DNA of 64,000 nt from Asterias rubens (taxonomy: Eukaryota), in assembly GCF_902459465.1 (NCBI RefSeq), contig NC_047083.1, forward strand, positions 6,200,001 to 6,264,000, written 5' to 3'. Below the pieces are notes generated by a model that did not search any database, was not told the origin of the DNA, and was given only the letters and a program-made list of their open reading frames with translations. The translations under genes and the position numbers were made by a program. Every line of letters begins with the position of its first letter. The first letter of the stretch is position 1. Positions 997-43,687 of the stretch are shown piece by piece.

Positions 997-1061
997 CTGC
1001 TAGAAGCTTATCTTCATCTTCCTCAAGACGCTTCTTCTCACTTGGTGTAAGGGAATCATAT
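997..1061 (-). CDS. MADD: MADD exon (last confidently placed in this window; gene continues leftward)
   Basis: (R)YDSLTPSEKKRLEEDEDKLLA(G) matches MADD RYxSL...RKRLEDDEDRLLA; ttcgtttcag acceptor, GTTAGT donor, phase 2 to 1. Confidence 0.88.
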
Positions 1062-1269
1062 CTGAAACGAATTACAAACATCTTTTAACACACTGATCAC
1101 AATTTCTTTCAAAGTTGAATTAAATCCATCAAACAAAGCTGTAAACTATTTCACTCAGCTATATTGTGATAATTGTTTACCTGTTCATATCATTGCACAT
1201 ACCAACAATGACCAATAGCAAGCAAGTGATTTCCTCCTCAATCAAGACATTAAACAAGTGACTGTAACA

Positions 1270-1515
1270 AATGGGTTTTAGTCCCAGTCATGACACTTGT
1301 GTCCTTAAGCAAGACACTTAACCATTGCTTGGTCCTTCGGATGGGACATAAAGCCATACATATACATGTAGGTCTCATGTGTTGTGTAACGCATGTCAAA
1401 GAACCCAGTGCGCTTATCGAAAAGAGAAGGGGTTCGCACCATTGTTACTGGCTGTGGCTGCTGTATGCGCCATGCACCTTGTAAACCCTTTTAAGGTGCT
1501 AAATAATTGGGTCTC
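1270..1515 (+). mobile_element. SINE with CORE-like central domain
   Basis: gacacttgtgtccttaagcaagacacttaaccattgctt...ggatgggac; related reverse-strand copies at about 24880-25085 and 56290-56545. Confidence 0.6.
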
Positions 1516-2989
1516 ACAATTCATCACTGCAATTACCTATCTTTCTGAAAGTTTGTATATATTCAGCATCTTACAGCACCGATTGAAAATAACTAGACGC
1601 CGTGCGCTAAATTTAGCGTGATAGAAATGCCTTGGTGCGATAGACTGTTGCGCCGCCTAACGCGTGGGTTTTATCGCGCCAGACAACAAAATGCATAAAC
1701 AGCCGTCGGCAATTAGTCGCACGTAGGCGGTACTCTTTCGCGACAATCTCCACGCGACAATCTCCACGCGAAAAATGCTGGACCATTTTTCTTGCATGGT
1801 TGCGTGAATGCTTGAGATGTGATTCATTGTTGTTCCCAGCTGAAAGCAACCACAGTTTACAGCCTATTACAGCTTTATTTGGAAGGAAAAAGCCGGTTTG
1901 ATTTGAAGAACTATTTACTGAAAAGAAGTTTGAAACTCTTGCGGCGTCACAAAGGAATTGTTGCTTATAGACAGCCCATTCCAAATGAACCAATGCACGA
2001 AAGTTCTATACAGTCACTTTTGTATAAACCTACCGCCTAAAAATAACCCAATAGGCAAGACTACGTCTTTATTTGGAAGGAGACAGCCGGTTTTATTGGA
2101 TGAGCTAGTTTCAGAAACAAGTATAAAAAGCTAGCGGCATCACATAGGAAGTGTAGGTGTCCTCTTTTGCCACTGTCCCCAGTGGATTAAATTCCCATCA
2201 ATGGGAAAGTCGGATCCCCCAAAAACCACACTTTTTAAGCAAAGCTTCTTAAATGTTTTACCAGCGGCATCTCAAAGGAACCGTTGAACAATGGAGCTGT
2301 CACTCATCTTATTGAAGGGTGTGCATTTTTTTGGTCGGGATAAATTTATAGTGGGGGGTTTGGCCCTGTGAGTTTTTTCAATTATGTGCTATAAAAAGGA
2401 AACATAAACTTGCTTTAACATAGTTCTTCAAAAGTAGGATGTCGTCTTACAGAAATAATTTATGATTACAAAGTCGACAGCCTGATAGAAGGATATTGCC
2501 TCCTTGATACGCTTTATCTTCTTGCTCTGATGCTGCAAAACGTATACGTAAGATGACATCATGAGACCAATTATGTCGGGATAAAAAACTCCTTGAAGTA
2601 GAATGTCATTTTCCAGATGCTGTTCAAATTAAATTCATGTTTAGTAAGATTGGACTCATATAATCTAGTCAAGGTAGTCGAACCAGTACAAAACTTTTAT
2701 AACATCAACATAATTAGAATTTAAGTAGGATTTTAAACTTGTGCATGGTGGAAAAACGATATAGAAAGGTTTGCGGTAACACCATGTGATGAGTTTGAGG
2801 TGGTTCTGAAAAGAACCGTTGGTTTTCAACTTTGAATTTAAATGTAACTCTTGTTACCATAAGTAAAACAAAAAATCATCAAACAAATGCCAATAAAAAA
2901 ATTATGAAAAGTAACTAAATTCAGGAAAAAACCCATTGTTCTAGAGAGGCAGGCAAAAATGTTCAACCACGTGATTCTTTCAACAGCAA

Positions 2990-5900
2990 GGTAAATAACA
3001 ACCCGTACACACGTATAGAAATAGGTGGAGTAAAACCTTGGCTGTCAAATTGAAAAGAAAGCAAGTTGACGGTCGGTCACTACTCCTTAAAGTGGCCGTG
3101 CTCATGCACCATCCTCTGACCATGGCAACACTGTTGGTAAGAAACTTTCCAATGCTTATGGGCCTTGCCGCGGGAATTATTTCAGCAAGCAAGCGCGTAA
3201 CCCCAAAGGACAGAATTCAGAACCACAGAATCAATCAAATACGTCGTTTATCTTTTCGGAATGTGCAGATTTACTTGAAGGCTTAACAATCAAGAAATTC
3301 CAACTGCAGCGGCATCACACAGGAATAAGTTTTCTTTGAAGACTAAGCTTTTTCAAGACGTTCTTTGGGGATTAATTTTTAGAAAAATTGAAAAGTTAAT
3401 GGAGAACAATTTCCTAAAAGGCCCTAATTCAAATATCAAAATAATCCCAATTCCCATAGGTCTTAGCATTTAAACGACAAATTATTGAAACGAAAGTTCT
3501 ATTTAAGTTATGTCATTTGAATACAATACCGAAACAGTGTTCGAAACGCTAAGACTGGCGTAGACTATTAAACTCTCAACTCTTATTATTTGCGGAATAA
3601 ATTCAATTGCCATGATTAAAGATTAAATTTTAATTAAATAATTAATTTAACTTTCGAACGAGTTTCATTGAAGGTTTCCTGGTTCATCAATAAAAACAAT
3701 TCTGAAAAATACTTATGTTTGAATTATCATTGTTTTAGAGCTTACGGATACGGAGGAGCATGGAAAAAACCTCACAAATTCGGCCTTAGGCATGAGGCAT
3801 GGACAATATGTTGAATAAAAAACCCCAGATATGTCCTCGGATTATTTAATAATTATTTATGCTACACGAAAATCAGTTTTGGGTTAAAAAGTTGAAGCTG
3901 CTAAGAAGAAAAAAAACACCATCAAATTTGTTCCAGCCTGCAATATTCTTGAAAAATTATGGTAGAATGATCATTTAAAACACAAAGGTAATTTTAACAA
4001 TACAACCTCATGCGTCACATCAAATTTTTCGCAGCAACGGAATCACTAAGGTAAGTTAAACAATATCTGAGTTCCACATACACGTTAAGCCAGGGTAAAA
4101 ACTAACCTGTCAAATTGTTTTCGATCCGCACATACTTGAACAAAACAGTATGCAATGAAACGAAAGCCAGTCGGTAAGAGACTATTGCAGAGTGGCCGTG
4201 CTCTTGTAGGCACTGACCACTGACCATGACAGCACTGTTGCTAGGCGGCGTAAGAACCTTTATAAAGCTTTTGGGCCTTGCCGCGGCAATTATTTCATAA
4301 AGAAAGCGGTAGGCCCCAAATGACAGAAGTCCGATCAACAGAATCAACCAATTACGTCTTTATTTTGACGGAATCGGCAGATTTGTTTGAAGGCTAACAA
4401 TGAAGAAATGCTGAACTCCAGCGGCATCACAAAGGAATCGTGTTTCTCTGAAGATGGACCTTGTTACCCACCCCCAGGTTTGAACGCGGTGAACATCAGA
4501 AAAAGTGTCAATCACTTGGGAAACATATAGAGGGGACTTTTTTAAGACCTACCAACCATTCTTTGGGGATTAATTTCGGGGGAAACTGGCAAGTTAATGG
4601 AGAATAATTTCCTGAAAGGCCCTAATTCAATTATCAAAATAATCTCAATTCCTATATAGCTCTTAGCATTTAGGAGAAAAATTATTGAAACGAAAGTTCG
4701 ATTGAAGTTATGTCAGTTGAAGACAATACCGAAACAATGTTCGAAACGCTCAGACTGGTGGAGACTATTAATCTCTCAACTCTTTTTACTGTTTGTGGAA
4801 TAAATTATTGTCTCTGCTTTTTTCAATGGCCCTGATTAAAGAAGATATTTATATTAAAGGGTTTACTTGTTTCTCAATCGAGTTTCATTGAAGGTTCCCT
4901 GGTTCATAAATTAATCAAAATAATCCCAGTTCAAATATAGCTCGTAGCATTTAAAATAAAAATTATTGAAAGGAAAGTTTGATTTAAGTTATGTCAATTG
5001 TACACAATGAAACAGTGTTCGCAACGCTCAGACTTGCTTAATCTCTCAACTCTTCTTATTATTTGTGGCATAAAACCGCTCTGCTTTTTTTCAATGACCC
5101 TGATTAAAGATGACATTTTAATCTAATAATTTATTTAACTTTCGAACGAGTTTCATTGGAGGTTTCCTGGAAGTTATCAATAAAAACAATTTGGAGGAAC
5201 GTCCACTGTTTTGCGGAAAAATACTAATGTTTGGATTCTTTTTGTAGAGCATATGGATAAGGAGGAGCTGGGAAAAAACATCACATATTCAGCTTTAGAC
5301 ACGAGGCATTCACAACATGTTGAATAAGAAACATATTTCCTCGGATTGTTTTATAATTGTTTATACTGTATCAAAAATAACTTTTGGGTTTAAAAGTTGA
5401 AACTGCCAAGAGGCGGAAAAAACACAATCACAAATTGCAACCTGCGCTATTCTTGAAAAGTTATGTAGATTGATCAGTTACAATACAAAGGTTTTTGTAA
5501 CAATACAATCGCATGCGTCACAGCAAAATGTAAGCGGCAACGCTCCGATCCGTAGCAGCACTGTTGCTGGAATCGGTTAATACAAAAATACCGAACATAG
5601 TGTGCAGGGTAAAACCGTTACCTGCCAAATTGTTTTCGAGCCGCACATTTGAACAAAATAGTAATGCATTAAAAAAAACAGTCAGTCAGAGACTCTTGCA
5701 GAGTGGCCGTGCTCTTGTAGGCACCTTCCTCTGACCATGGCAACACTGTTGCTAGGTGGCGTAAGAACCTTTCCAAAGCTTATTGACCTTGCCGCGGCAA
5801 TTATTTCATAGAGAAAGCGGCGTAGGCCCCAAAATGACACAAGTCCGATCCACAGCGTCAACAAACTACGTCTTTATTTTGACGGAATCGGCAGATTTAT

Positions 5901-6150
5901 CTGAAGGCTTTACAATAAAGAAACTCCAAACTAGAGCAACATCACAAAGGAATCGTGTTTCTTTGATGATGAACCTCGTTACCCCCCCCCCACACTTTGA
6001 ACGCGGTTCAAAGTGTCAATCACTTCAGGAAAATCTACCATCGCGGACATTAATAGACAGAAATATTTTTAAGGGGTAAAAATATACATGTGGATCTACT
6101 TCGGGGAAACCAGACCAGGTAACAGAGATTAGTTTCCTAAAAGGCACTTT
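2990..6150 (+). repeat. diverged tandem modules of about 1.06 and 1.5 kb (third copy truncated) inside the TIR element
   Basis: Shared blocks recur, e.g. gtggccgtgctc (about 3092, 4193, 5703), ccttgccgcgg and tttcctaaaaggc. An internal duplication lies at about 4630-4790 versus 4915-5050. Confidence 0.85.
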
Positions 6151-9100
6151 TTAATAAGTTATAAAAAGTCCGATCGACAACAGTTTCTAAAGAAAACGTA
6201 ATATTTATTGTAATAGCTGTATACATGTAAGCAACTTAGGATAGGATGTGTAACGTATTCTGTGCCGTTCATGAGAAATATGAACAGGTTATGATCAAGC
6301 CTTTGACTTGAAATAAACGCAACTTATAATAAACGCAACGGACAATACACATATTACATGACCCGGCCGAGTTCTATAACCTTAAGCTAAGCAAAACAAA
6401 AACTGCGCTTACAGGGTGCTTCGCCTAGCGTCTATAATAGCGTATTTTCACGAATTGGTTTTAGCATAGCTCTAAGGTTTATAGCAACAGTGTTTTGCTT
6501 GTGTGCTTGCGTTCTCCAAGTTTTTACTAGGCATTATTTGCCTACATAAAACGAGGACCAAAAGTGGACAACCCTTTTCTCGAAATCTGATAGAGTTAAC
6601 AGAAATGGGGCGCTTGTACAAAAGGCGGAGAATGGTGATGCAAGTTTTGCCGGCGGTAAGCAGAGCCATAAAATTTGGCATGGACTCTGCGTTGAGGAGT
6701 TCACCCACACAAGACCAAATTCCTTATTAAAACGGAAAATACTGGGTATGAAATAAACTCAAGAAGCCTGTACTAAGAAACATTGGTTGAATCTAAGCAA
6801 GATCTGAGATGATTATTATTTTTTTATTTATTATTATAAGCATCAGTTTCTGCTGAACAGCGATTAATTAATTAATTTCGATAGAGTTGAACGCAACAAC
6901 AATAGAAAACACATAGTTACGGGAGCAGTAAATGTTTAATTGCGTCAAAAAAGGTCATGACATAACATTGTGGTTTGAGAATTGTCGGACTTGGCTACGA
7001 TCCAGTGATAATTTTGTAATGTATCTGTTTTTATTAATAGTACAGAACCTTATTCCCCCCACGCGATAATTCCCAATTGATCTTAATGATAAGCATTAGC
7101 GCTAAATTAATGGATTACACGCGCTAAATTAATTATTCCACATGAGATGGAAGAGCGAGTTGCGGGCGATTTTTATTACTCACCGCCACTAACCCCCCCC
7201 CCAGTAATGTGTAGGCAATACGAACTGTTTGCAGTCAAACTATGTACCCTTGGCTTACACTTTGGGGTTCTACATACACCGATCTATACTGGTGCACCCC
7301 CCCCCCCCCCCCCGGCAAAAACATAAATAACTGAGGTGTGTATCTTATACGAAAGTTAAAGTCGCCGGTGATGATGATTTCCGATGGATGAAGCAGATAT
7401 TCCAAAATCAAAGGAATCTGCTGTTTTATGTGTAGGCTTATAAAATAAAGAAACTCCAAACCACAGCGGCATCACAGAGGTTGTTGTGACTGGTGCCCAC
7501 TAAATTCTAACTCAGCAAAGAATGTGTCAAGCATTAGTTTCTTGATGAAAAAAGGCGTTTTGATTCAACACTAGCTGGCAGATTCGAATACGCCGTCATT
7601 ATTTACTGCACAGACCTTTACTGCACAGACTGCATACGAACATTGTGCACACGTATTATCCACACATTATACACACACAACTAGATTTCATTATCGATTT
7701 TTTTGAAATGAAAATAACCCTATACATTGTGTGTGTAGGAAAACATCCATTTTGTTATGTTAGATCAGTAGCACTTTTTTACTGCGCTACGTACGTGCAA
7801 ACTGTTGTACAATCTAGACGTAGATTCTCAAAACACAATCTCGTATGAGTGGAAATCAGAATGCTTTAGGGACGGACATCAATGGACACACCTATACATT
7901 TTCAAATATTTTATTGAAATTTGAAGTAACTATTCTCATATAAATTATTAACAATGAACAGCAACGGTTTGCATGAATTGTCAAAAATTTCAACTTGTTA
8001 ATACACTCTGAAAAAGGAAGCAAACTCGTCAAAAGTATGTGGTAAGGGGTTTGTTTGAGACGTATAGGTGAGGGACCCTCACTTTATACATCCCATCCGA
8101 GGGAGAAAATAAAATCGTCCTTAATCATGTTCAACATTTTATATACATAATAGGATGTTTGTATTACCATTTCACGTTCAAAACTTATAGGTATTTTATG
8201 TTCCTTTTGCCAATCCCTCGCGCTTTCATGACGTGCTTTCAATTTCAGCGATTTGTGGCTAATGGCTCGGTATGGTGTGGTTTTTAAATGTTTTAAATGT
8301 GCAACTATAATCTAATAATGGAAGCTAGTTATTCTTCTTCAAAGAGGGTTCAAATTCATAATATAATAATCACAGAAATATGCTAAGCACAGAAAAACAA
8401 TTGCTTAGCAGACACAGTGTACCAGCCAAAATTCCATAAAATTGACATCGTTGCAACTTGTGCCCACTCATTTTTTGCTTTTATACAGCAAAGAATTTAG
8501 CTAAGCAGTGTTTTCTCGCCTAACAGCTTTACTTAATTGTGTCCGTTTTTTTAATTATACATATATACCTTTTGAACGATAGATGGGTACATTATGGGGT
8601 GCTGGCTTGGTTGTTTGTATGGGTTTTAAAAATGTATATATTAATGTTTTTGCCTATTTTCATAGTACTTTTGCCCGAGTTGCTCAACAGTAACTGCTCG
8701 TTGGTTTAATAATTTAAAACAATGTTTTGATGTTGCTATTTTGATTGAATTTTTGTTTTTGTAGATTCGAGTAAAAAGCAAAAAACCCTTGAATTTTTCT
8801 TGAGTATAGCACGAGAAATCGTTGTAATAAGAGTCTAAAAGTTGTTGCCCATCAGCCGTGTCAATTTTTTTCTTTCTTTTGGTAAGCGCTTTGCCTATTC
8901 GCCTGCAATGCGAAATTTGTGTAGGTTTATAGATCGGGCCATGGAAATTAAAATACACACAGTGATCCCCCACATAGAGAGAGCTACACTGAGGATTTAA
9001 CTTTAAACAGAGCGTTTGCGTATGACACGCTGGCTGTGGTTTGTTACAATGTATTACTTCACCTGGCAGATTCTGTTTTAAAACTTGACAGTCTTTTAAA

Positions 9101-9329
9101 CATGCGCGTATTATATTATCCACACAGTACAGTCAGCTTTCATTATCGATTATTTTGCTCTCCTCTTTGTTTAGAGAGCAAACTAATTCTACGAGCAGTG
9201 TGCATATCCGCATAGTGTATACGTTTGGTATATGACTTTTAAAAACGGCAATACTAAACTTACGTTGTAATGGTAGCAGGAACCTTTGTCGGAGACTAAA
9301 TCAAAAATACGACTTTGATTTTTTTTTAC

Positions 9330-11140
9330 TTGTTAATATTTACGGTCAAGCTTTAATCCACGGAACTGAAGAGGGAGAGTTACGGATGTACGATCGCTAG
9401 CCTGGGTAATTTTTAAACCAAATTTGAAACGATCTTTGGATAGTTTTAGTCCTTCAGTAACCAAAGACAAAACAGGAGCGTCAAATATATCCATTTTGAC
9501 CAAAATAAACAGCAATGGTTAAAAAAAAAAAAAATCACATTGATTGTCATAATTAATCTATTGAAAGGGTTGTATTGGGTACGATCGCTACAGTAATGTT
9601 ATCATCCTCAAACGGATATCATTATAAATTTAATATACATGGGAGATTCACATTAATCCGTTTGGCTTTACTTAAATAAAAATGAGGTCAACATCATCAA
9701 AAGTTCAACCCTTATTCGTATATTATCCATAGCTGAAAATTTGTATTTTGGTAAACAGGGGGTGTGGATATAAGAAAACAAAATCGACTTCAATTATTCA
9801 TAATGTTAAGATAACTTGACCAAAAGTGTAAATTATTATTATTCGTCGCCGGGCGGGCGGACACGAAAAATATGGATTGCGATTTGTTTCAATATTATTT
9901 TAGTGTGGTTTTAAAACCAAAGACGGCACCAGAACAAAATTATGTTAAATAAATCTTTAATGAAAAAATATCGCCCGAGGTTAATTATAATACACTTAAC
10001 TTTAAAGACTTACTTTGAACAAAATCAATTTACGGTCAGATGTTGATCCACGCGGTTCCGAAGAGGGAGACATACGGTCGCTAGAGTATTTTCAGAATCA
10101 AATTGACAACGATCTTTGGATAGTTTTCTAGTCCTTCATTAACCAAAGACATGAACGCAAAAAATTCCTTTGTGATACGTACATTTTTATCAATAAACGG
10201 CGATGGTTATTAAAAACAAGTATCTTTAAAACCGACTCAAAAACAAATTGTTAATATGATTGTCATGTGTATTAATCTACCGTACCGAAGAGGAAGGGTT
10301 GGGTACGACACTCTAGAGTAATTTTATCATCCACAAACGTAGCCGTATTTTACTTCTTCAATACACTTTATGGGAGATTCACAGCAATCCGTTTGCCTTC
10401 ACCTAAATATGAGGTAAACGTATATCCATACCTTAAAATTGTTTACGTTGCCGGGAGGGGGGGGGGGGGGGGGGAGCGGGTGTGATGAAACAAAATTGAA
10501 TTAAATTATATATTATTGTAAACTAAAAATGTTGTATGTTCGCCACCGGGCGAACACAACTACAATTTGTGTGGATTTTGATTGGTTTTTTTTCCAAGAA
10601 AAAAACAACGCCGCGATCCGCAATAAAATTAACCAACTAATAAAAATGTCCTGATGCTTGAAAAACGTCACCGCAAAGTCACTTACAGTTGCCCATTTGA
10701 ATATGTATACGCTTGCCTGTGCCGAACTAAATGTTAATATTTTAACAGTTTAATAGTTGGGCAATAACTTGTGATGGCGTTCCGCTTTTTGTTGGCATTA
10801 ATATTATTACTCAAAAATAACAAGTTGGACACAGATCAGATTTTCAGTAACAAAAGACAAACAACATTTCAAGCGTCAAATAATTTCCTTTGTGAAAAGT
10901 ACATTTTGTTATGCTCAAAATAAACATCCATTGTTAATTAAAAACAGGTACTTTTAAAACCGACTCTTAAACAAATTGTTAATATTGATAATATTGATAA
11001 TATTGATAATATTGATAATATTGATAACATTGATAATATTGTATTAATATTGTATTAGTCTACCGTACTAATCTACCGTACCGAAGAGGAAGGGTTGGGT
11101 ACCATCACTAAAGTAGTTTTATCGTCAACAAACGTAGTCT
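9330..11140. repeat. about 700-bp diverged tandem modules (about 2.5 copies) inside the TIR element
   Basis: tacggtca at 9341/10031; gatctttggatagtttt at 9431/10111; gggagattcac at 9641/10373; ccgaagaggaagggttgggtac at 10285/11081. A (aatattgat)n microsatellite sits at about 10981-11040. Confidence 0.85.
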
Positions 11141-11499
11141 AAGTCATTACTGGAGGCGATACCTATACACAAATCAAGACTGGTCATATTGCAAAACACA
11201 ATTTTCCAATTGGCTGTTAAATTTCCAATGTCATTTCAACTGGCATTAATTTGGCCAGGGGACCACCGAACCCAAAGAAAACCACAGAGACACCGCGCAA
11301 CCCAGCGGCTTGTCTTTTGAGGGAAAAAAAATGTATAACAAACTGGGGGGGGGGGGGGTTAAGATAAGACATGATTGGATCTCGATAAGAGTGTCAATCA
11401 TACTCACAGAAAATACGGACGCAAACTTCTTAACAGTTGAACCGTGGCTGAAATTGCCCAGGCGTATATCACGTCATCACACCTCAATCGAATGAATTC

Positions 11500-12490
11500 C
11501 GATCACATACACAACTAGTTGCCGACACCGACTGGCATTTAATTTTACAACAAATAATACTACAGCCAGGATACACCTGCCTGGAGTATATGTTTTTTTT
11601 ATATAATGACAATCGTGGCGCTCCATGCGTGGGCCACGTCGTTGGTGGTCTTGGACCAAAGAAAATGGGGACCCAGACTTCTAAAAGGTTTAAGAACATT
11701 GTCTGGACTTTAACCAACTGGACACAACTCAAGCAAAATAATGCAAACTTCCAATCACAGACACAAGTTGCCGAAACCTAATCACAGACACAAGATGCCG
11801 ACACCTAATCACAGACCCAAGATGCCGACGTTACAAAGTAATCAACTATGTACATGTACATGTATGGCGCCGGTAAATCAGGCATAATCAAAGAACGTAC
11901 ATTCTCGGGAAATCACGCAAAATGTCGGTAGGGTACTGCCAGTTTAGCGCATGGCGCTCCACGCGTGGGCTTCGCGCAGATGGTATTTGACCAAAGAAAA
12001 TATGGCGACGACGCAGACTTCTCAAAGGTGAACCAAGTTGAACATTGTCTTGGCTTATAACCAATCACAACTCAAGCAATACCAACTTCCAATCACAGAC
12101 ACAAGTTGCCGACACCTAATCACAGACACAAGATGCCGACACCTAATTACAGACACAAGATGCCGTCAGCGACTGGCATTTAATTTCACAACAATGAAAA
12201 TACACATTGAGTCTATTTTTTTCATAATCAGACCGCCAAATTCATTTTAAAAGACCATTATTTAAACACCCAAAATAATCAACTACACATGTATGGCGCC
12301 GGTGAATCACGCAACATCAAAGCATCCTTCAATCTCAGTAATAACGGTGAATTACACTCCAGCAAAGCAACCTTCATTATGGGGATAATCATGGGAATTG
12401 AGCGACATCAAAGCACTATTCATTCTCTCGTAATCACGCAAAATGTCGCGTGGGTGTTGCAAGTTTAGCGCGTGGCACTCCACGCGTGAG
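11500..12490. repeat. duplicated right subterminal modules with a 27-bp triplet
   Basis: ggcgctcca(c/t)gcgtgg...gaccaaagaaaa...aatcacagacacaag(t/a)tgccgacacct x3 occurs at about 11615-11830 and again at about 11950-12167. Confidence 0.85.
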
Positions 12491-12680
12491 TCACGCGTTA
12501 ATATACCGACGGCTATTTGACTTTTTTTCAAGACATGTTATCGCGCCAACCTCCACGCCCGTTTGCGCGTGGGATTTATCGCACGGCGTCTAGTTATTTT
12601 CAATCGGTACTGTAAGTACCTTGTTTGGTAGATACGTGCCCTATATAAGACTTTGATATTATTATTCTTATTATTGTTAC

Positions 12681-12801
12681 CTATGAATCATCTCAGCTGG
12701 CCCTTGGTCCATACCAACTGCATCTCTCTCAGCGGCTACAGCATCAAGAAAAGCATCCTCCCAGAACTGAACCTCATCCCAAATTGGAGATCTGTCCTTA
12801 G
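12681..12801 (-). CDS. MADD: MADD exon (C-terminal conserved region)
   Basis: (A)[39 protein letters not shown](R) matches [33 protein letters not shown]; phase 1 to 2. Confidence 0.95.
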
Positions 12802-13643
12802 CTAAAAAGAAGACAACAAATATTGCCTGTTAACATTTGTTTCACTACCAATCATGGATAACACACTATACATTTGATTAATTAAAGGAACATTACAGAA
12901 TTTTTTTTACTAACAAAACGGTTGCTGGCAGTGCAAGCACTTTATGTAATCCATCATATATATAAACTGACAAACCTGTAGAAGTTCAAGATCGATCAGC
13001 CATCTGGGTCACGAATGTACATCGATGCCAAACCAACAGGGAATACAACGCTCACTGAGCAATATATTCCAAACGCGATTATTTACTTCTCATCAAATAT
13101 GACCATTCAGACAGAAATATTTCAATGGATGTTTTCTTCTATCATCATCGTTAGGCCGTGTAAGTTTTATGTAAATCTGTGATTTTCACGATTTTTGTTT
13201 CTTACCAATTCTGTAACGTTCCTTTAAACCTGATGGATGTTTTGATGTAAAAAAAAAAAAAAAAATATAAACATAAATTTTAAAATTATCTTCACTTTAT
13301 TGTTCAAATGCTTAGAGCTTGGATAGAAGATTATCCAATAGAATTTGAAATGTTGATATCATGCACACTTGCATCTAGACTGCATCAAGTTTTGCAACTT
13401 CCGGCTCAAAATATGCCAAAGCTAGCATGTGATAATGTGTAATATCACAAAAACACAACTCCATCAATCATCTAGGCACTTCTAACCAAAAATACAAATT
13501 CTGAAGAATCAAAAACATAAATCTTTGCGAATCAAAAAGCTTGTTCTTCGTACAATAATCCTATAAGAAGAAAAGAACCTAAGAATTGGTTGTAGAAAAT
13601 GCGATAGAGAGTCAAGGTTTGTTAAAATTGTGCATACATGTAC

Positions 13644-13800
13644 CAATTAGTGCTTCAAACACATAGTGTCGCAAGATGAGTTCTGAGGTATCTGTATCGG
13701 TAGCAATCATGTTTCCTCCATGGTAACGGAAGCCAGCACTCACACAGCTTTTACAACTCCATGTGATGGGAGATCGTCGCCTTCCACCAATGGATGATAG
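13644..13800 (-). CDS. MADD: MADD exon
   Basis: LSSIGGRRRSP...SAGFRYHGGNMIATDTDTSELILRHYVFEALI(G), similar to MADD RxYLYEGLLG; phase 0 to 1. Confidence 0.85.
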
Positions 13801-14027
13801 CTACAAACAAAACAAGTTACTTCACTTTACTTTCAGAGAATTAACTTACTTGCAGACTAGTCTCAAACTGAACAGCCAGTTCATTTCGTGAAAATAAATA
13901 TGTCCTTTACACATGGCTAGTCATCAATATTATATGACACATTTAACTCTAAAAAAGAGTGGCAAAGAATGGCAAAGGTCGTGGGTTCGATTCACACCTA
14001 CGGTGTAGTAACATGCCTGTGGATTCT

Positions 14028-14348
14028 TTAAAGGATTTGGGTACTTTTTGTAACACAAAACACAATGTCCACAGATTTGCATCAAACTTACACCATTTGA
14101 AGATAATGATAGTAGAAAGCGTACCTTGAAATATTAGTTGCTGAGGTGATGCATTTTTTGAGAAATGAGTAAAACAATGTCATGAAAATACGTTTTAGAT
14201 GCTAAAATAATTTCTCGTCTCATGATCACTGAGCAAGTAATATTTTGAGGGAAGCTTTCAACCATCATTATCCTCAAACTGTGTAAGTTTAGTGTAAATC
14301 TGTGGACATTGTGTTTTTTGTCCTACAAAAGTTACATACACCCTTTAA
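14028..14348. mobile_element. MITE with TTAA TSD (Kolobok-like)
   Basis: TTAA|AGGATTTGGGTACTTTTTGTA ... TACAAAAGTTACATACACCCT|TTAA inverted ends. Confidence 0.7.
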
Positions 14349-15009
14349 CAGAACTCAGGAAAAGAACCAAATTTACACACTTTGGGTGAAACCAAATAAA
14401 AAATTCTTAATCTCTGTTGCAAATTTAACATCTATTAAACTCTATAATAATCTCTATTCACAATGTTATGAGATTACATGTTTTGCATCTTTCATTGAAC
14501 AAGTCTCAAAGATAATTTATGCTATTAGTATTATAACACCCCTAACAAGAATTATGCATTTTAATTGGTTTAGAGCACATCACATGATGTGTTTATTGAC
14601 TAGAAAGCTTTGTTACACACTAAACATCCAGCAATCAATGTACTATACCCATAGTAACCAGTGAACTAGACCCATAGCAACAGCAGATTTCTATAGATCT
14701 AGGCACAACATATGTTTGGGGTGTTATAAAACAATAGATGGATTGCAGACAGCGTCATGGACTGCCATATTTGATGATAAACAATGGGAAAGTGCATGTG
14801 TGTACGTACTCAGCACAACTCTCAGCCAATGACGCATGTGCAATCAATCTATTAATGACTGCTTATTGACTGCTTTTACCCGTGCTGTGGTTTAAACTAT
14901 GACTCCCTCGGTGTTCTGTGGAACATTCTTTTTTTCCCTAGGTTTCACCACAGGATTACTAGGAGAGTTGTCTTTTTAAACTAGCACTTAAAGCAGTCAA
15001 TATTTGTTT

Positions 15010-18117: not shown

Positions 18118-18240
18118 ATGAATATAGTAGAACAACATTGGAAAACAGATAAGTTTTCAGTTTATTCAGAGTTTCCTATATTACGCTGTGTCTATTTTGT
18201 ACATGAATGAAATGGGACGACACTTGGTTCAGGTGAATGT

Positions 18241-19785
18241 TGTGAATGTGTGTTGGCACATGGCAACGTGGAGTGGTGCACTGTTGTGAATGTGTGTTGG
18301 CACATGGCAAAGTGGATTGGTGCACTGTAGTGAATGTGTGTTGGCACATGGCAAAGTGGAGTGGTGCACTATAGTGAATGTGTGTTGGCACATGGCAAAG
18401 GGGAGTGGTGCACTGTTGTGAATGTGTGTTGGCACATGGCAAAGTGGAGTGGTGCACTGTTGTGAATGTGTGTTGGCACATGGCAAAGTGGAGTGGTGCA
18501 CTGTTGTGAATGTGTGTTGGCACATGGCAAAGTGGAGTGGTGCACTGTTGTGAATGTGTGTTGGCACATGGCAAAGGGGAGTGGTGCACTGTTGTGAATG
18601 TGTGTTGGCACATGGCAAAGTGGAGTGGTGCACTGTTGTGAATGTGTGTTGGCACATGGCAAAGTGGAGTGGTGCACTGTTGTGAATGTGTGTTGGCACA
18701 TGGCAAAGTGGAGTGGTGCACTGTAGTGAATGTGTGTTGGTACATGGCAAAGTGGAGTGGTGCACTGTAGTGAATGTGTGTTGGCACATGGCAAAGTGGA
18801 GTGGTGCACTGTAGTGAATGTGTGTTGGCACATGGCAAAGGGGAGTGGTGCACTGTAGTGAATGTGTGTTGGCACATGGCAAAGGGGAGTGGTGCACTGT
18901 AGTGAATTTGTGTTGGCACATGGCAAAGTGGAGTGGTGCACTGTAGTGAATGTGTGTTGGCACATGGCAAAGGGGAGTGGTGCACTGTAGTGAATGTGTG
19001 TTGGCACATGGCAAAGGGGAGTGGTGCACTATAGTGAATGTGTGTTGGCACATGGCAAAGTGGAGTGGTGCACTGTAGTGAAAGTGTGTTGGCACATGGC
19101 AAAGGGGAGTGGTGCACTATAGTGAATGTGTGTTGGCACATGGCAAAGTGGAGTGGTGCACTGTAGTGAATGTGTGTTGGCACATGGCAAAGGGGAGTGG
19201 TGCACTGTAGTGAATGTGTGTTGGCACATGGCAAAGTGGAGTGGTGCACTGTAGTGAATGTGTGTTGGCACATGGCAAAGTGGAGTGGTGCACTGTAGTG
19301 AAAGTGTGTTGGCACATGGCAAAGGGGAGTGGTGCACTGTAGTGAATGTGTGTTGGCACATGGCAAAGTGGAGTGGTGCACTGTAGTGAATGTGTGTTGG
19401 CACATGGCAAAGTGGAGTGGTGCACTGTAGTGAATGTGTGTTGGCACATGGCAAAGGGGAGTGGTGCACTGTAGTGATTGTGTGTTGGCACATGGCAAAG
19501 GGGAGTGGTGCACTATAGTGAATGTGTGTTGGCACATGGCAAAGGGGAGTGGTGCACTGTTGTGAATGTGTGTTGGCACATGGCAAAGGGGAGTGGTGCA
19601 CTATAGTGAATGTGTGTTGGCACATGGCAAAGTGGAGTGGTGCACTGTAGTGAATGTGTGTTGGCACATGGCAAAGTGGAGTGGTGCACTGTTGTGAATG
19701 TGTGTTGGCACATGGCAAAGTGGAGTGGTGCACTGTTGTGAATGTGTGTTGGCACATGGCAAAGTGGAGTGGTGCACTGTAGTGA
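18241..19785. repeat. 44-bp minisatellite, about 35 copies
   Basis: Unit gtgaatgtgtgttggcacatggcaaag(t/g)ggagtggtgcact(g/a)t(a/t). Confidence 0.97.
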
Positions 19786-19801
19786 TGCATTAATGACATA
19801 C

Positions 19802-19867
19802 CTCTTATGGCTCCTTCCTCTGTGCTAGTGCTACTGCTGCTCACAACAGATCCACGTTTCTCCCAAC
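19802..19867 (-). CDS. MADD: probable MADD exon
   Basis: (G)WEKRGSVVSSSSTSTEEGAIR(G); 66 nt, TAG acceptor, GTATGT donor, phase 1/1 consistent with its neighbours. Confidence 0.65.
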
Positions 19868-20014
19868 CTATAGAGTCAAATAAGCATCAATTGATCATTA
19901 CACCTTGTGCCTTATTACTTCATCAAATATATTCTCAATATTATTAGCTGTTTTTGTGTTTTGCACCTTTGGAACCAGACAGCTATTGGAGCAATTTGAT
20001 TGTGTTGTGACCTA

Positions 20015-20244: not shown

Positions 20245-21127
20245 GTCTCAATGTAATGGCTCTGCTTACAGCACAATTCTGCCCTTACAGCATCTAAACT
20301 TGTGCGCTTTTACAGGGCACCATAAGCGCATGGTGGTTAGCACTGCCATGACATTAGGCCAAGGACATAAAGATGTAGACCTTTATCACAGTGTGGCCAT
20401 CTTGATTTTACTCCATTCAAACTCATTGCAACCAAACTGAGGCTGGATGAAATAATAGTCTGGCGCCATGTTTGCGCATTGAATGTTAGCATTTGTTACA
20501 GTGGAAACAGGGAACATGACCAAGGTGGTGATAGCGTGAAAAAGGTCTTTATTAAAATGATTTTAAAGGTATGTACGTAAGAAATTTCTTTAAAATGTCT
20601 GTTGTTTATGATTTCTCTAACAGTTTTAAGCAATGACAGGTGAGTAGTGAGTATTTTCCATTGAACTAGACTGGTTTAGGAAGGGAGGGAGGGTGTAATG
20701 TACAGAAACATGGCTTAACATCTAATTCAAATACAATGACTGGATTACATTCGTACATGTAAGGAAACTTGTGAAAATGTGGAGTTTCATCTTATTAAAT
20801 GACACACATTGCATTCAAATTGTCATGTGGGTACATAAATTAAGTTTCTTTTAAACTGGGAAAAAAAGTAGCTGCCTATTGTAGGTATTTAGTTGTCCAT
20901 GATTTGTACATTTTCAAAAAATTTTGAACATATTCATGTGTTACATTTTTGGGTGACTTTATTAAAATAGTTGCAACAATTGAATGAATTTGAGCAAAGA
21001 AGAACAAAGAGAGATGACCCATGGTAAGATAATCATAAACAAGAATAAAAAAACATGTACACACATTCATCATACATTTTATGCAATCCTTCATTCCTAA
21101 ACATTAAACTAAAAGTTGGTATGAAAA

Positions 21128-23782
21128 ATATGTACATCGCTAAACAGATCAATCCTAAACTGTGCATGTATTGCAGGTTTTAAGATGGTGTGGATAATAT
21201 GTACATCGCTAAACAAATCAATCCTAAACTGTGCATGTATTGCAGGTTTTAAGTTGGTGTGGATATGTACATCGCTAAACAAATCAATCCTAAACTGTGC
21301 GTGTATTGCAGGTTTTAAGTTGGTATGGATATGTACATCGCTAAACAAATCAATCCTAAACTGTGCATGTATTGCAGGTTTTAAGATGGTATGGATATGT
21401 ACATCGCTAAACAGATCAATCCTAAACTGTGCGTGTATTGCAGGTTTTGAGATGGTATGGATATGTACATCGCTAAACAGATCAATCCTAAACTGTGCGT
21501 GTATTGCAGGTTTTAAGATGGTATGGATATGTACATCGCTAAACAAATCAATCCTAAACTGTGCGTGTATTGCAGGTTTTAAGATGGTGTGGATAATATG
21601 TACATCGCTAAACAAATCAATCCTAAACTGTGCGTGTATTGCAGGTTTTAAGATGGTATGGATATGTACATCGCTAAACAAATCAATCCTAAACTGTGCG
21701 TGTATTGCAGGTTTTAAGATGGTATGGATATGTACATCGCTAAACAAATCAATCCTAAACTGTGCGTGTATTGCAGGTTTTAAGTTGGTATGGATATGTA
21801 CATCGCTAAACAAATCAATCCTAAACTGTGCGTGTATTGCAGGTTTTAAGATGGTATGGATATGTACATCGCTAAACAAATCAATCCTAAACTGTGCGTG
21901 TATTGCAGGTTTTAAGTTGGTATGGATATGTACATCGCTAAACAAATCAATCCTAAACTGTGCGTGTATTGCAGGTTTTAAGTTGGTATGGATATGTACA
22001 TCGCTAAACAAATCAATCCTAAACTGTGCATGTATTGCAGGTTTTAAGATGGTATGGATATGTACATCGCTAAACAAATCAATCCTAAACTGTGCATGTA
22101 TTGCAGGTTTTAAGTTGGTATGGATATGTACATCGCTAAACAAATCAATCCTAAACTGTGCGTGTATTGCAGGTTTTAAGTTGGTATGGATATGTACATC
22201 GCTAAACAAATCAATTCTAAACTGTGCATGTATTGCAGGTTTTAAGATGGTATGGATATGTACATCGCTAAACAAATCAATCCTAAACTGTGCATGTATT
22301 GCAGGTTTTAAGTTGGTATGGATATGTACATCGCTAAACAAATCAATCCTAAACTGTGCGTGTATTGCAGGTTTTAAGTTGGTATGGATATGTACATCGC
22401 TAAACAAATCAATCCTAAACTGTGCATGTATTGCAGGTTTTAAGTTGGTATGGATATGTACATCGCTAAACAAATCAATCCTAAACTGTGCATGTATTGC
22501 AGGTTTTAAGATGGTATGGATATGTACATCGCTAAACAAATCAATCCTAAACTGTGCGTGTATTGCAGGTTTTAAGATGGTATGGATATGTACATCGCTA
22601 AACAAATCAATCCTAAACTGTGCGTGTATTGCAGGTTTTAAGATGGTATGGATATGTACATCGCTAAACAAATCAATCCTAAACTGTGCATGTATTGCAG
22701 GTTTTAAGTTGGAGTGGATAATACGTACATCGCTAAACAAATCAATCCTAAACTGTGCGTGTATTGCAGGTTTTAAGTTGGTATGGATATGTACATCGCT
22801 AAACAAATCAATCCTAAACTGTGCGTGTATTGCAGGTTTTAAGTTGGTATGGATATGTACATCGCTAAACAAATCAATCCTAAACTGTGCGTGTATTGCA
22901 GGTTTTAAGTTGGTATGGATATGTACATCGCTAAACAAATCAATCCTAAACTGTGCGTGTATTGCAGGTTTTAAGTTGGAGTGGATAATATGTACATCGC
23001 TAAACAAATCAATCCTAAACTGTGCATGTATTGCAGGTTTTAAGTTGGTATGGATATGTACATCGCTAAACAAATCAATCCTAAACTGTGCATGTATTGC
23101 AGGTTTTAAGTTGGTATGGATATGTACATCGCTAAACAAATCAATCCTAAACTGTGCGTGTATTGCAGGTTTTAAGTTGGTATGGATATATACATCGCTA
23201 AACAAATCAATCCTAAACTGTGCATGTATTGCAGGTTTTAAGATGGTATGGATATGTACATCGCTAAACAAATCAATCCTAAACTGTGCGTGTATTGCAG
23301 GTTTTAAGATGGTATGGATATGTACATCGCTAAACAAATCAATCCTAAACTGTGCATGTATTGCAGGTTTTAAGTTGGTATGGATATGTACATCGCTAAA
23401 CAAATCAATCCTAAACTGTGCGTGTATTGCAGGTTTTAAGTTGGTATGGATATGTACATCGCTAAACAAATCAATCCTAAACTGTGCGTGTATTGCAGGT
23501 TTTAAGTTGGTATGGATATGTACATCGCTAAACAAATCAATCCTAAACTGTGCGTGTATTGCAGGTTTTAAGTTGGTATGGATATGTACATCGCTAAACA
23601 AATCAATCCTAAACTGTGCATGTATTGCAGGTTTTAAGTTGGTATGGATATGTACATCGCTAAACAAATCAATCCTAAACTGTGCATGTATTGCAGGTTT
23701 TAAGTTGGTATGGATATGTACATCGCTAAACAAATCAATCCTAAACTGTGCATGTATTGCAGGTTTTAAGATGGTATGGATA
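21128..23782. repeat. 66-bp minisatellite, about 40 copies
   Basis: Unit atatgtacatcgctaaacaaatcaatcctaaactgtgc(g/a)tgtattgcaggttttaag(t/a)tggtatgg; it generates the 874-aa and 885-aa pseudo-ORFs. Confidence 0.97.
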
Positions 23783-42865: not shown

Positions 42866-43139
42866 CTGTCAACAAAAAAGACACAACTTAATGCATGTTG
42901 TATCATTACCATCATCATACAAAGCCCATAAGGACAAACACAAGTCTTGCCTACCTAAAATTCAACTTCTATAACTGTGCAACATTTGCTCTGCAGTACT
43001 TACATTGTTCAAAACCAAGTGATCTTTTTACTCCTGACTCCACCACCTTGCCCCAGTAAGGGCTGATAACTACTGGTTATTCACTTCACTAGGATAGGGT
43101 CTAGACTCAATTAATTATAACCAAATGCTACATGAAAGC

Positions 43140-43361
43140 NNNNNNNNNNNNNNNNNNNNNNNNNNNNNNNNNNNNNNNNNNNNNNNNNNNNNNNNNNNNN
43201 NNNNNNNNNNNNNNNNNNNNNNNNNNNNNNNNNNNNNNNNNNNNNNNNNNNNNNNNNNNNNNNNNNNNNNNNNNNNNNNNNNNNNNNNNNNNNNNNNNNN
43301 NNNNNNNNNNNNNNNNNNNNNNNNNNNNNNNNNNNNNNNNNNNNNNNNNNNNNNNNNNNNN
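43140..43361. other. assembly gap (222 N)
   Basis: Run of N characters. Confidence 1.
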
Positions 43362-43687
43362 TATATAAATATTTATGTGTCTTGTTGTTCTTGTTTGTAT
43401 GTTATCAATTTAATTTCTATGTCTTACAACCCGTAGCTCATTTAATCTGTTATATAATAGCAGTATGTATTGGACACTTGTTGTATTGATGTATGTTGTT
43501 GCTGATAATTGTTGTTGAATAAACGAAGTAGTATAACTCCACATCAAGAGAAAAAAAAATACACAAACAAATAACAAACATAAACATATTAAAACTTACA
43601 AAAAAACAATAAACATATCCCAAACATATAATGATATGAAGTAAACAACAAATCTCAGGAAAAAACCAAAAACCAAAAACTAAACAC

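What the first reader, a model, noticed from the sequence alone, without database searches (positions are those of the whole stretch)
1574..12612. Giant (11,039 bp) TIR/TA-TSD element built from nested repeat modules, filling a MADD intron
Seen: 39-bp TIRs with 2 mismatches, TA on both flanks, and extra subterminal similarity (aacagccgtcggcaatt at about 1698 versus reverse complement aatagccgtcggtatatt at about 12500). No transposase-like ORF is present. The element occupies 11.0 kb of the 11.6-kb intron 1062-12680 and ends only 66 nt from the exon donor. Established: TA TSD plus 5'-CAG TIRs is typical of the Tc1/mariner (IS630) superfamily, whose members are usually only 1-3 kb. Inference: near-identical ends around deeply diverged internal modules suggest a recently mobile cassette with an old, internally amplified cargo rather than a simple deletion derivative. 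This is the best candidate for an undescribed system in the window.
Basis: partly seen in the sequence, partly recalled or inferred. Interest (0 to 1): 0.8.

Follow-up and report, generated by a model that had tools for sequence, protein, structure and literature searches.

The report
Giant non-autonomous Tc1-like DNA transposon
The 11-kb stretch is a real jumping gene of the ordinary Tc1/mariner type that has lost its own enzyme; it belongs to a family whose copies are all about 5-15 times longer than usual (6.7-22 kb) and whose one intact enzyme gene sits in a 22-kb relative on another chromosome.

Summary
Window 1574-12612 has 39-bp terminal inverted repeats with 2 mismatches and TA on both sides.

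- **Exact boundaries.** The element split a copy of a SINE. The two flanks joined with one TA match intact SINE copies, and the joined 33-mer occurs about 2,190 times in the genome.
- **A multi-copy family.** About 45 such ends exist, all next to TA with unrelated flanks. They form 13 convergent pairs of 6.7-22.2 kb and none of MITE size. The three copies aligned in full cover 63-81% of the window copy at about 92-94% identity.
- **No enzyme here.** The window copy has no transposase remnant and no Pfam domain.
- **A long form elsewhere.** A 22.2-kb copy on contig C1 shares the ends and carries an intact 372-aa DD34E transposase like Sleeping Beauty. Two decayed or partial long forms lie on C15.
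- **Clustering.** Copies group in patches of up to about 300 kb, which fits local hopping.

The mechanism is ordinary cut-and-paste, with the enzyme supplied in trans (inferred). What is unusual is the size, the non-coding modular interior, and a family-specific 18-nt motif (109 genomic copies). The element is nevertheless a transposase-deleted derivative, and it is not very young. I could not check whether Dfam or Repbase already list it.

The parts
1574..12612 (+). Whole non-autonomous element, 11,039 bp
   Evidence: Homology to other genomic copies starts and stops exactly at these bases. The flanks joined with one TA reconstitute an intact SINE.
1572..1573 (.). Left copy of the TA target-site duplication
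12613..12614 (.). Right copy of the TA target-site duplication
1574..1620 (+). Left terminal inverted repeat. The family consensus is 47 bp, beginning CAGTACCGATTGAAAATAACTAGACGCCGTGCGATAAAT. In the window copy 39 bp pair with the right end, and there are two private substitutions (positions 4 and 34).
12574..12612 (-). Right terminal inverted repeat. It belongs to the subfamily variant that reads ...AAATCCCACGCG after position 39.
1694..1712 (+). Inner inverted motif AAACAGCCGTCGGCAATT (IR/DR-like second site), left side
   Evidence: Conserved in 5 of 5 copies, paired with the right-side motif.
12496..12516 (-). Inner inverted motif AAATAGCCGTCGGTATATT, right side
1868..2290 (+). Left subterminal units that carry three copies of the family-specific motif AGCGGCATCACAAAGGAA (GCGGCATC... 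core at 1941, 2134, 2264)
3051..6025 (+). About 2.5-3 diverged direct copies (76-80% identity) of a 1.1-1.5 kb module, each ending in the bipartite motif (motif at 3309, 4421, 5936; another at 7466)
2777..2822 (-). Histone-3'-stem-loop-like hairpin inside the element
   Evidence: Rfam RF00032 scores 34.1 bits (gathering score 34). The same hit appears at the same relative place in 6 other copies, up to 37.7 bits.
11753..12165 (+). Two arrays (11753-11829 and 12091-12165) of a 27-bp repeat, AATCACAGACACAAGATGCCGACACCT, in the right subterminal region
1262..1573 (+). 5' part of the tRNA-derived SINE copy that was the insertion target
   Evidence: Alignment to intact SINE copies L073-L075.
12615..12672 (+). 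3' part and tail of the same SINE copy
12681..12802 (-). Host exon upstream of the intron (…DQGPAEMIH; MADD-like), with the GT donor at 12680-12679
997..1062 (-). Host exon downstream of the intron (YDSLTPSEKKRLEEDEDKLLA)

Best explanation
Window 1574-12612 is one copy of a low-copy family (about 25-30 loci) of very large Tc1-like (IS630-Tc1-mariner, DD34E) DNA transposons. It is a non-autonomous derivative. It keeps the 47-bp TIRs, the inner repeat and about 1 kb of each subterminal region of a roughly 22-kb long form, but has lost the segment that encodes the transposase. Its interior is non-coding, family-specific DNA made of old, diverged modules.

It moved by cut-and-paste into a TA inside a SINE in an intron of the MADD-like gene and duplicated the TA (shown). 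The enzyme was supplied in trans by a long-form element such as C1:27420724-27442904, which carries an intact DD34E transposase (inferred). The clustering of copies on chromosomes fits the local hopping known for Sleeping Beauty (inferred).
For: **Boundaries and target duplication.**
- All 34 distinct ends examined abut TA, with unrelated flanks.
- The window flanks joined with a single TA align without interruption to intact SINE copies.
- The joined 33-mer occurs 2,189 times in the genome, against 0 for the control. A loose end in run X7 at 12615 showed the same junction.

**Mobility as a whole unit.**
- Left-end and right-end sequences are different from each other, and each is multi-copy.
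- 45 ends give 13 convergent pairs of 6.7-22.2 kb.
- Copies on C2, C16 and C1 are collinear with the window copy at 90-97%, and the similarity stops at the TIRs.
- Interior probes hit only family loci, apart from one short piece of another repeat.

**Enzyme.**
- The 22.2-kb copy holds a 372-aa ORF with DDE_3 (E 1e-15) and weak HTH_Tnp_Tc3_2.
- The ORF aligns to the catalytic domain of Sleeping Beauty SB100X, PDB entry 5CR4 (E 6e-20), with D, D and E conserved and 34 residues between the second D and the E.
- It is 45-50% identical to ordinary Tc1-like proteins of 335-340 aa.
- No inverted repeat of its own brackets this gene.
- A second long form on C15 is collinear over more than 10 kb at about 94% and includes a decayed copy of the gene. 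A third, partial one exists.
- An independent metagenome contig has the same segment at 98.5% with the ORF intact.

**Clustering.** 25 locus pairs lie within 300 kb, against 0.7 expected. The flanks of clustered copies differ.

**Background.** Sleeping Beauty shows local hopping and size-sensitive transposition (PMC3952818).
Against: - No experiment or read-level evidence links this transposase to these TIRs.
- The genome holds only one intact copy of the gene.
- No polymorphic or orthologous empty site for this particular insertion was obtained. The empty sites are paralogous SINE copies.
- The long form is only 80-95% identical to the window copy. The actual source element may therefore have been a different, now lost, master copy.
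- Known Tc1-like enzymes lose efficiency with length (PMC3952818, PMC6431247), which makes repeated movement of 10-kb units somewhat unexpected.
Confidence: 0.85

Rival explanations
1. The transposase in the 22-kb copies is a passenger, either an unrelated Tc1-like gene or a nested element. The enzyme that moved this family would then be extinct, or encoded elsewhere with the same TIRs.
For: Only one intact gene exists, plus one decayed copy. The long forms differ 5-20% from the short forms. Binding was not tested.
Against: No separate TIRs lie around the gene. The gene sits in the same place in two long forms that are collinear over more than 10 kb. No other element with this TIR exists among 54 genomic matches. 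The nearest paralogue (58% identity, on C15 and C98) has no family TIR within 2.4 kb.
Confidence: 0.1
2. The 11 kb is a composite: two independent short TIR elements in inverted orientation enclosing ordinary intron DNA.
For: Only the outermost 39-47 bp are strictly inverted.
Against: The left and right subterminal regions are different sequences that always occur in the same relative order and orientation. The interior is shared by copies on other chromosomes. No short element with these ends exists. The flanks rejoin into one SINE.
Confidence: 0.01
3. The copies arose by segmental duplication or gene conversion, not by transposition.
For: Copies cluster within a few hundred kb on several chromosomes. 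One copy has a 3.2-kb internal tandem duplication at 99.9% identity.
Against: Similarity ends exactly at the TIRs, every copy has TA and different flanks, and copies lie on at least 15 contigs.
Confidence: 0.02

Closest known systems
Sleeping Beauty and other Tc1-like DD34E elements with IR/DR ends (PDB 5CR4; PMC5224488, PMC3952818)
   Same: TA target duplication and 5'-CAGT ends. A DD34E transposase alignable to the SB100X catalytic core with all three acidic residues. A second conserved inverted motif about 100-125 nt inside each end. Clustered insertions like Sleeping Beauty's local hopping.
   Different: Sleeping Beauty-type elements are about 1.6 kb, whereas this family is 6.7-22 kb. Here about 95% of the long form is non-coding. 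The ends carry different arrays of short direct repeats on the left and right. The inner motif is not an obvious repeat of the outer binding site.
Non-autonomous Tc1/mariner derivatives (MITEs such as Stowaway or MiHsmar1; from my own knowledge)
   Same: No transposase, keeps TIRs and the TA duplication, presumably moved in trans.
   Different: MITEs are under 0.8 kb and high-copy. This element is 11 kb, the family has about 25-30 loci, and no short form exists in the genome.
Giant eukaryotic DNA transposons reviewed in PMC6431247 (Polinton/Maverick, Teratorn, Starship and others)
   Same: Length above 10-20 kb, and it moves as a unit.
   Different: Those carry many protein genes and use other enzymes and other target duplications. 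This family has only one gene in the long form and none in the window copy. That review lists no Tc1/mariner example.
TIR elements with internal repeat arrays (for example Drosophila Tetris or foldback-type and bivalve pearl-type elements; recalled, not tested)
   Same: Terminal inverted repeats around internally repeated non-coding units.
   Different: Here the repeats are long (1.1-1.5 kb) and old (about 77% identity), not a homogeneous satellite. The ends are short Tc1-type TIRs, not long foldback arms.

Membership tests
IS630-Tc1-mariner superfamily (Tc1-like, DD34E) | TA target-site duplication | tested here: met
   All 34 distinct ends examined abut TA. One TA is present at the paralogous empty sites.
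IS630-Tc1-mariner superfamily (Tc1-like, DD34E) | Short terminal inverted repeats beginning 5'-CAGT | tested here: met
   The family has a 47-bp TIR beginning CAGTACCG. The window's left end reads CAGC through a private change.
IS630-Tc1-mariner superfamily (Tc1-like, DD34E) | Encodes a DDE transposase with 34 residues between the second D and the E, plus an N-terminal paired-like HTH | tested here: met
   Met for the long form only: DDE_3 at E 1e-15, weak HTH_32 and HTH_Tnp_Tc3_2 below Pfam cut-offs, and the D/D/E aligned to SB100X. The window copy has none, so it is a non-autonomous member.
IS630-Tc1-mariner superfamily (Tc1-like, DD34E) | The transposase lies within the same TIR pair as the shared ends | tested here: met
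   C1:27420724-27442904 has both ends, the family modules and the gene. A second collinear long form lies on C15.
IS630-Tc1-mariner superfamily (Tc1-like, DD34E) | The transposase binds and cuts these ends | not testable with these tools
   Needs a biochemical or cell-based assay.
MITE | Small size (under about 0.8 kb) and high copy number | tested here: not met
   The smallest convergent pair is 6.7 kb, and there are about 45 ends genome-wide.
piggyBac | TTAA duplication on both sides | tested here: not met
   The window target is CTTAAG, but only TA is duplicated and only TA is shared among copies.
Polinton/Maverick or other gene-rich giant elements | Protein-primed polymerase, integrase and capsid-like genes; 5-6 bp duplication | tested here: not met
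   The window copy has no ORF above 160 aa and no Pfam domain. The long form has only the transposase above 120 aa, apart from low-complexity repeat frames; the other frames of the long form were not scanned against Pfam.
Catalogued repeat family (Dfam/Repbase) | Match to a deposited consensus | not testable with these tools
   Neither library is available here. Literature searches found no description.

The most novel reading that the evidence does not exclude
This may be a Tc1-like lineage that is naturally adapted to move 10-22 kb units. In that reading, its family-specific internal repeat arrays act as accessory binding sites for the transposase or a host factor and help long ends find each other or avoid self-integration. 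The arrays are the 18-nt motif AGCGGCATCACAAAGGAA with its fixed-distance partner (109 copies, all but one of the 100 listed inside family loci, always in the element's orientation) and the 27-bp arrays on the right side. The enzyme would then be a natural large-cargo relative of Sleeping Beauty.
Probability: 0.15. Interest if true: 0.7.

Novelty: new variant of a known kind. Interest (0 to 1): 0.45.

Why it matters
Tc1/mariner elements are textbook small transposons of 1.3-2.4 kb. Their best-studied member, Sleeping Beauty, loses efficiency with length, partly through self-integration (PMC3952818, PMC6431247). In this family every paired copy is 6.7-22 kb, and no short derivative exists although short ones should out-compete long ones. 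That suggests either that the interior is needed in cis or that this enzyme tolerates length.

If transposition assays confirmed this, it would bear on what sets the size limit of cut-and-paste elements. It could also yield a large-cargo vector enzyme. For annotating this genome, the result explains an 11-kb intron expansion lying 68 nt from a splice donor of the MADD-like gene.

Tried and rejected
- **Read and contig evidence.** Contigs break at the TIR, so none bridges the junction in any run, not even the probable source sample. Presence or absence of this insertion in other individuals could not be decided. The loose end at 12615 came from paralogous SINE copies, not from an empty allele.
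- **Metagenome scans.** Scans for the intron-exon junction and for the TIR found nothing.
- **Hidden genes in the window copy.** tRNA scan: none. Rfam: only a histone-type hairpin. Pfam on ten ORFs: only a sub-threshold chance hit to phage GP46.
- **The 130-aa ORF at 1613-1993(-).** It stays open in four copies, but by eye most nucleotide changes between copies also change the amino acid; no dN/dS was computed. I treat it as a chance ORF in a GC-rich end.
- **The 58% paralogous transposase at C15:14244886 (identical on C98).** Checked as an alternative partner; it has no family TIR nearby.
- **One cluster per chromosome as a centromere signal.** Considered and dropped. C15 and C24 have several patches, several contigs have none, and the window copy sits alone in a gene.
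- **Fetching all full-length copies.** Only four short-form copies (the window's own plus three others) and three long-form stretches were aligned in full. The others are known from end and interior hits.
- **Species identity.** Not established. Marine metagenomes hold the sequence.
Full report

The repeat finder reports one strong inverted pair in window 1000-13200. Its arms are 1570-1612 and 12574-12616, 43 nt and 95% complementary. Reading the sequence gives ...CATCT-TA|CAGCACCGATTG... on the left and ...CAATCGGTACTG|TA-AGTACC... on the right. That is a 39-nt terminal inverted repeat with two mismatches and TA on each side. The extra four paired bases come from the palindromic target CTTAAG.

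No ORF exceeds 160 aa. Ten ORFs gave no credible Pfam domain. tblastn with the family's transposase finds nothing in the window.

The intron is 1063-12680 on the minus strand, and the element ends 68 nt from the donor. The host gene has uDENN and DENN exons at 55.3-58.3 kb. The exon beside the element resembles SBF2/Death_MADD clusters, which supports the MADD reading.

**2. Exact boundaries, from about two thousand paralogous empty sites**

Laying contigs of four runs on 10500-14500 showed a loose end at 12615 in run X7. Its letters match the window's left flank.

This happens because the element landed inside a high-copy repeat. A 33-mer made of the left flank, one TA (TG in most copies) and the right flank occurs 2,189 times in the genome, against 0 for the control.

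Three intact copies were fetched. The window's flanks joined with a single TA align with them without interruption. The repeat has a tRNA-like head and an ATT-rich tail, so it is a tRNA-derived SINE. The insertion is therefore exactly 1574-12612, and it duplicated TA.

**3. It is a family, and the whole 10 kb moves**

- The first 227 nt and the last 233 nt are different sequences, and each has about 20-25 good matches in the genome.
- The 19-nt tip occurs 30 times exactly and 54 times with up to 2 mismatches, against 7 for the control.
- All 34 distinct ends examined are preceded by TA, and their flanks are unrelated.
- Forty-five ends form 13 convergent pairs of 6,663 to 22,181 bp. None is of MITE size.
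- Three full copies were fetched (C2, C16, C1a). They are collinear with the window copy at 90-97%, and the similarity stops at the TIRs.
- Each of those copies covers 63-81% of the window copy. The rest reflects gain and loss of modules.
- C1a is 14.3 kb because a DIRS-like retroelement is nested in it.
- C2 has a 3.2-kb internal tandem duplication at 99.9% identity.
- Interior probes (window 7700-9400 and 3400-4900) hit only family loci, apart from about 170 nt of another repeat.

It is not met.

**4. Anatomy of the window copy**

- The ends have a 47-bp family TIR and an inner inverted motif at about 95-125 nt.
- The left subterminal 700 nt carry three units that end in AGCGGCATCACAAAGGAA.
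- Positions 3051-6025 hold about three copies of a 1.1-1.5 kb module. The copies are only 76-80% alike. Each ends in the same motif, preceded at a fixed distance by ACGTCTTTATTT..GGAA..GC.G.TTT.
- The right 900 nt carry two arrays of a 27-bp repeat and other short repeats.
- The 18-nt motif occurs 109 times in the genome with up to 1 mismatch, against 0 for the control. All but one of the 100 hits listed lie inside family loci and in the element's orientation.
- An Rfam histone 3' stem-loop hit at 2777-2822(-) scores 34.1 bits, just over the threshold. It recurs at the same place in six other copies, up to 37.7 bits. No histone ORF lies next to it.

**5. The enzyme**

A genome-wide DDE_3 search placed one hit with an open 375-aa frame inside the largest TIR pair, C1:27420724-27442904.

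- The ORF is 372 aa; the start is probably Met34, giving 339 aa. It has DDE_3 (E 1e-15) and weak Tc3-type HTH matches.
- It aligns to the Sleeping Beauty SB100X catalytic domain (5CR4, E 6e-20). WTDES, QDNDPKH and NPIENLW align with the Sleeping Beauty motifs, and 34 residues separate the second D from the E.
- Its relatives are ordinary Tc1-like proteins of 335-340 aa, at 45-50% identity.
- No inverted repeat of its own brackets the gene.

The 22.2-kb element shares the left 1.1 kb (about 95%), modules, and the right roughly 8 kb (80-90%) with the short forms. It has about 12 kb that they lack, including the gene, which lies on the element's minus strand.

A second long form at C15:14.39-14.41 Mb is collinear with it over more than 10 kb at about 94%. 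It carries a decayed copy of the gene with seven stops. A third, partial long form lies at C15:14.318 Mb. An ENA metagenome contig matches 4.9 kb of the long form at 98.5%, with the ORF intact and four amino-acid changes. One probable RNA run holds 54% of the sampled words of the gene.

The window copy is therefore a transposase-deleted derivative of this long form or of a relative of it.

**6. Distribution**

After collapsing paired ends there are 32 loci on 15 contigs. Twenty-five locus pairs lie within 300 kb, against 0.7 expected under uniformity. Examples are C10 11.89-12.21 Mb, C1 27.42-27.62 Mb and C15 14.29-14.41 Mb.

The flanks of clustered copies differ, so these are separate insertions. 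One end abuts the family's own 27-bp repeat, which indicates insertion into another copy or into itself.

This pattern matches the local hopping described for Sleeping Beauty (PMC3952818). A centromere-type explanation was considered and dropped, because some contigs have several patches, some have none, and the window copy is solitary inside a gene.

**7. Mechanism**

Shown:
- precise TA-duplicating insertion of a unit bounded by Tc1-type TIRs;
- many independent insertions of 7-22 kb units;
- a DD34E transposase physically inside long members of the same family.

Inferred:
- that this enzyme binds the 47-bp TIR (and perhaps the inner motif) and moves short forms in trans;
- that clustering reflects local hopping.

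Unknown: why no short derivatives exist and what the internal motif arrays do.

**8. Comparison and novelty**

By TA duplication, CAGT ends and a DD34E enzyme, this is a Tc1-like element, and the window copy is a non-autonomous member. It differs from every Tc1/mariner element I know in three ways:
- length (6.7-22 kb against 1.3-2.4 kb);
- about 95% non-coding content in the long form;
- distinct subterminal repeat arrays on the left and right.

A review of giant eukaryotic transposons names no Tc1/mariner case and notes that DNA transposition efficiency drops above about 6 kb (PMC6431247). Sleeping Beauty is size-sensitive, partly through autointegration (PMC3952818).

I rate it a new variant of a known kind and of moderate interest. 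I could not check Dfam or Repbase, so prior cataloguing remains possible.

**9. Age**

The nearest copies are 96-98% identical at the ends and 93-97% in the interior. The window's left TIR has two private substitutions, one of them in the terminal CAGT. The insertion is not very recent, and this copy may no longer be excisable (inference).

Noticed in passing
window 2777-2822 (-); also L002:462-508, L005:2722-2768, L007:463-509, L018:435-480, L003:460-505, L010:463-508: A hairpin matching Rfam's histone 3' UTR stem-loop (34-38 bits, gathering score 34) sits about 1.2 kb from the left end in at least seven copies. It is on the same strand as the long form's transposase gene. There is no histone ORF beside it, and it lies in a 182-bp segment that copy C1a lacks.
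   Followed up: partly
window 1941, 2134, 2264, 3309, 4421, 5936, 7466 (+): The family-specific 18-nt motif AGCGGCATCACAAAGGAA, with an upstream partner at a fixed distance, is much better conserved than the modules around it. It has 109 genomic copies, all but one of the 100 listed inside family loci. Another first-stage note (s1-178751) covers the same motif.
   Followed up: partly
window 1262-1573 and 12615-12672; intact copies L073-L075: A tRNA-derived SINE with at least about 2,200 genomic copies. The copy in this intron ends about 10 nt from the splice donor.
   Followed up: partly
L063:2869 to L064:~1340 (C1:27554998-27560840): A roughly 6-kb retroelement with reverse transcriptase, RNase H and a tyrosine-recombinase-like C-terminus (DIRS-like) is nested in the 14.3-kb copy. 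It has long open frames of 652, 492, 446 and 383 aa. This reading rests on the motifs alone; no family search was run on them.
   Followed up: no
L061/L062 (C2:6711198-6723620), element positions 3697-6937 and 6891-10133: A 3.2-kb internal tandem duplication at 99.9% identity within one copy.
   Followed up: no
G000:C15:14244886-14245902 (L076:2387-3400, -) and C98:1852-2868: A 58%-identical paralogous Tc1-like transposase with an open 427-aa frame, present twice in identical form. It has no family TIR or obvious TIR of its own within 2.4 kb. It could be another large element or a domesticated gene.
   Followed up: partly
window 18179-19886 and 21112-23802: Long tandem-repeat arrays in upstream introns of the MADD-like gene. 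They produce spurious open frames of up to 897 aa on the minus strand.
   Followed up: no
window ~43130-43400: A run of N (assembly gap or masked stretch); left untouched.
   Followed up: no
L012 (C10:12210762, -) and L028 (C15:5888525): The flanks next to these ends (tgtgtctgtgatTA, gtctgtgtagcaTA) look like the family's own 27-bp repeat. This suggests insertion into another copy or self-integration.
   Followed up: no
C1:27420724 and 27442904 flanks: The two flanks of the 22-kb long form are near-inverted copies of each other (GAGGAGAACG-TA ... TA-CGTATCCTCT). The target may have been palindromic, or another inverted repeat may lie outside.
   Followed up: no
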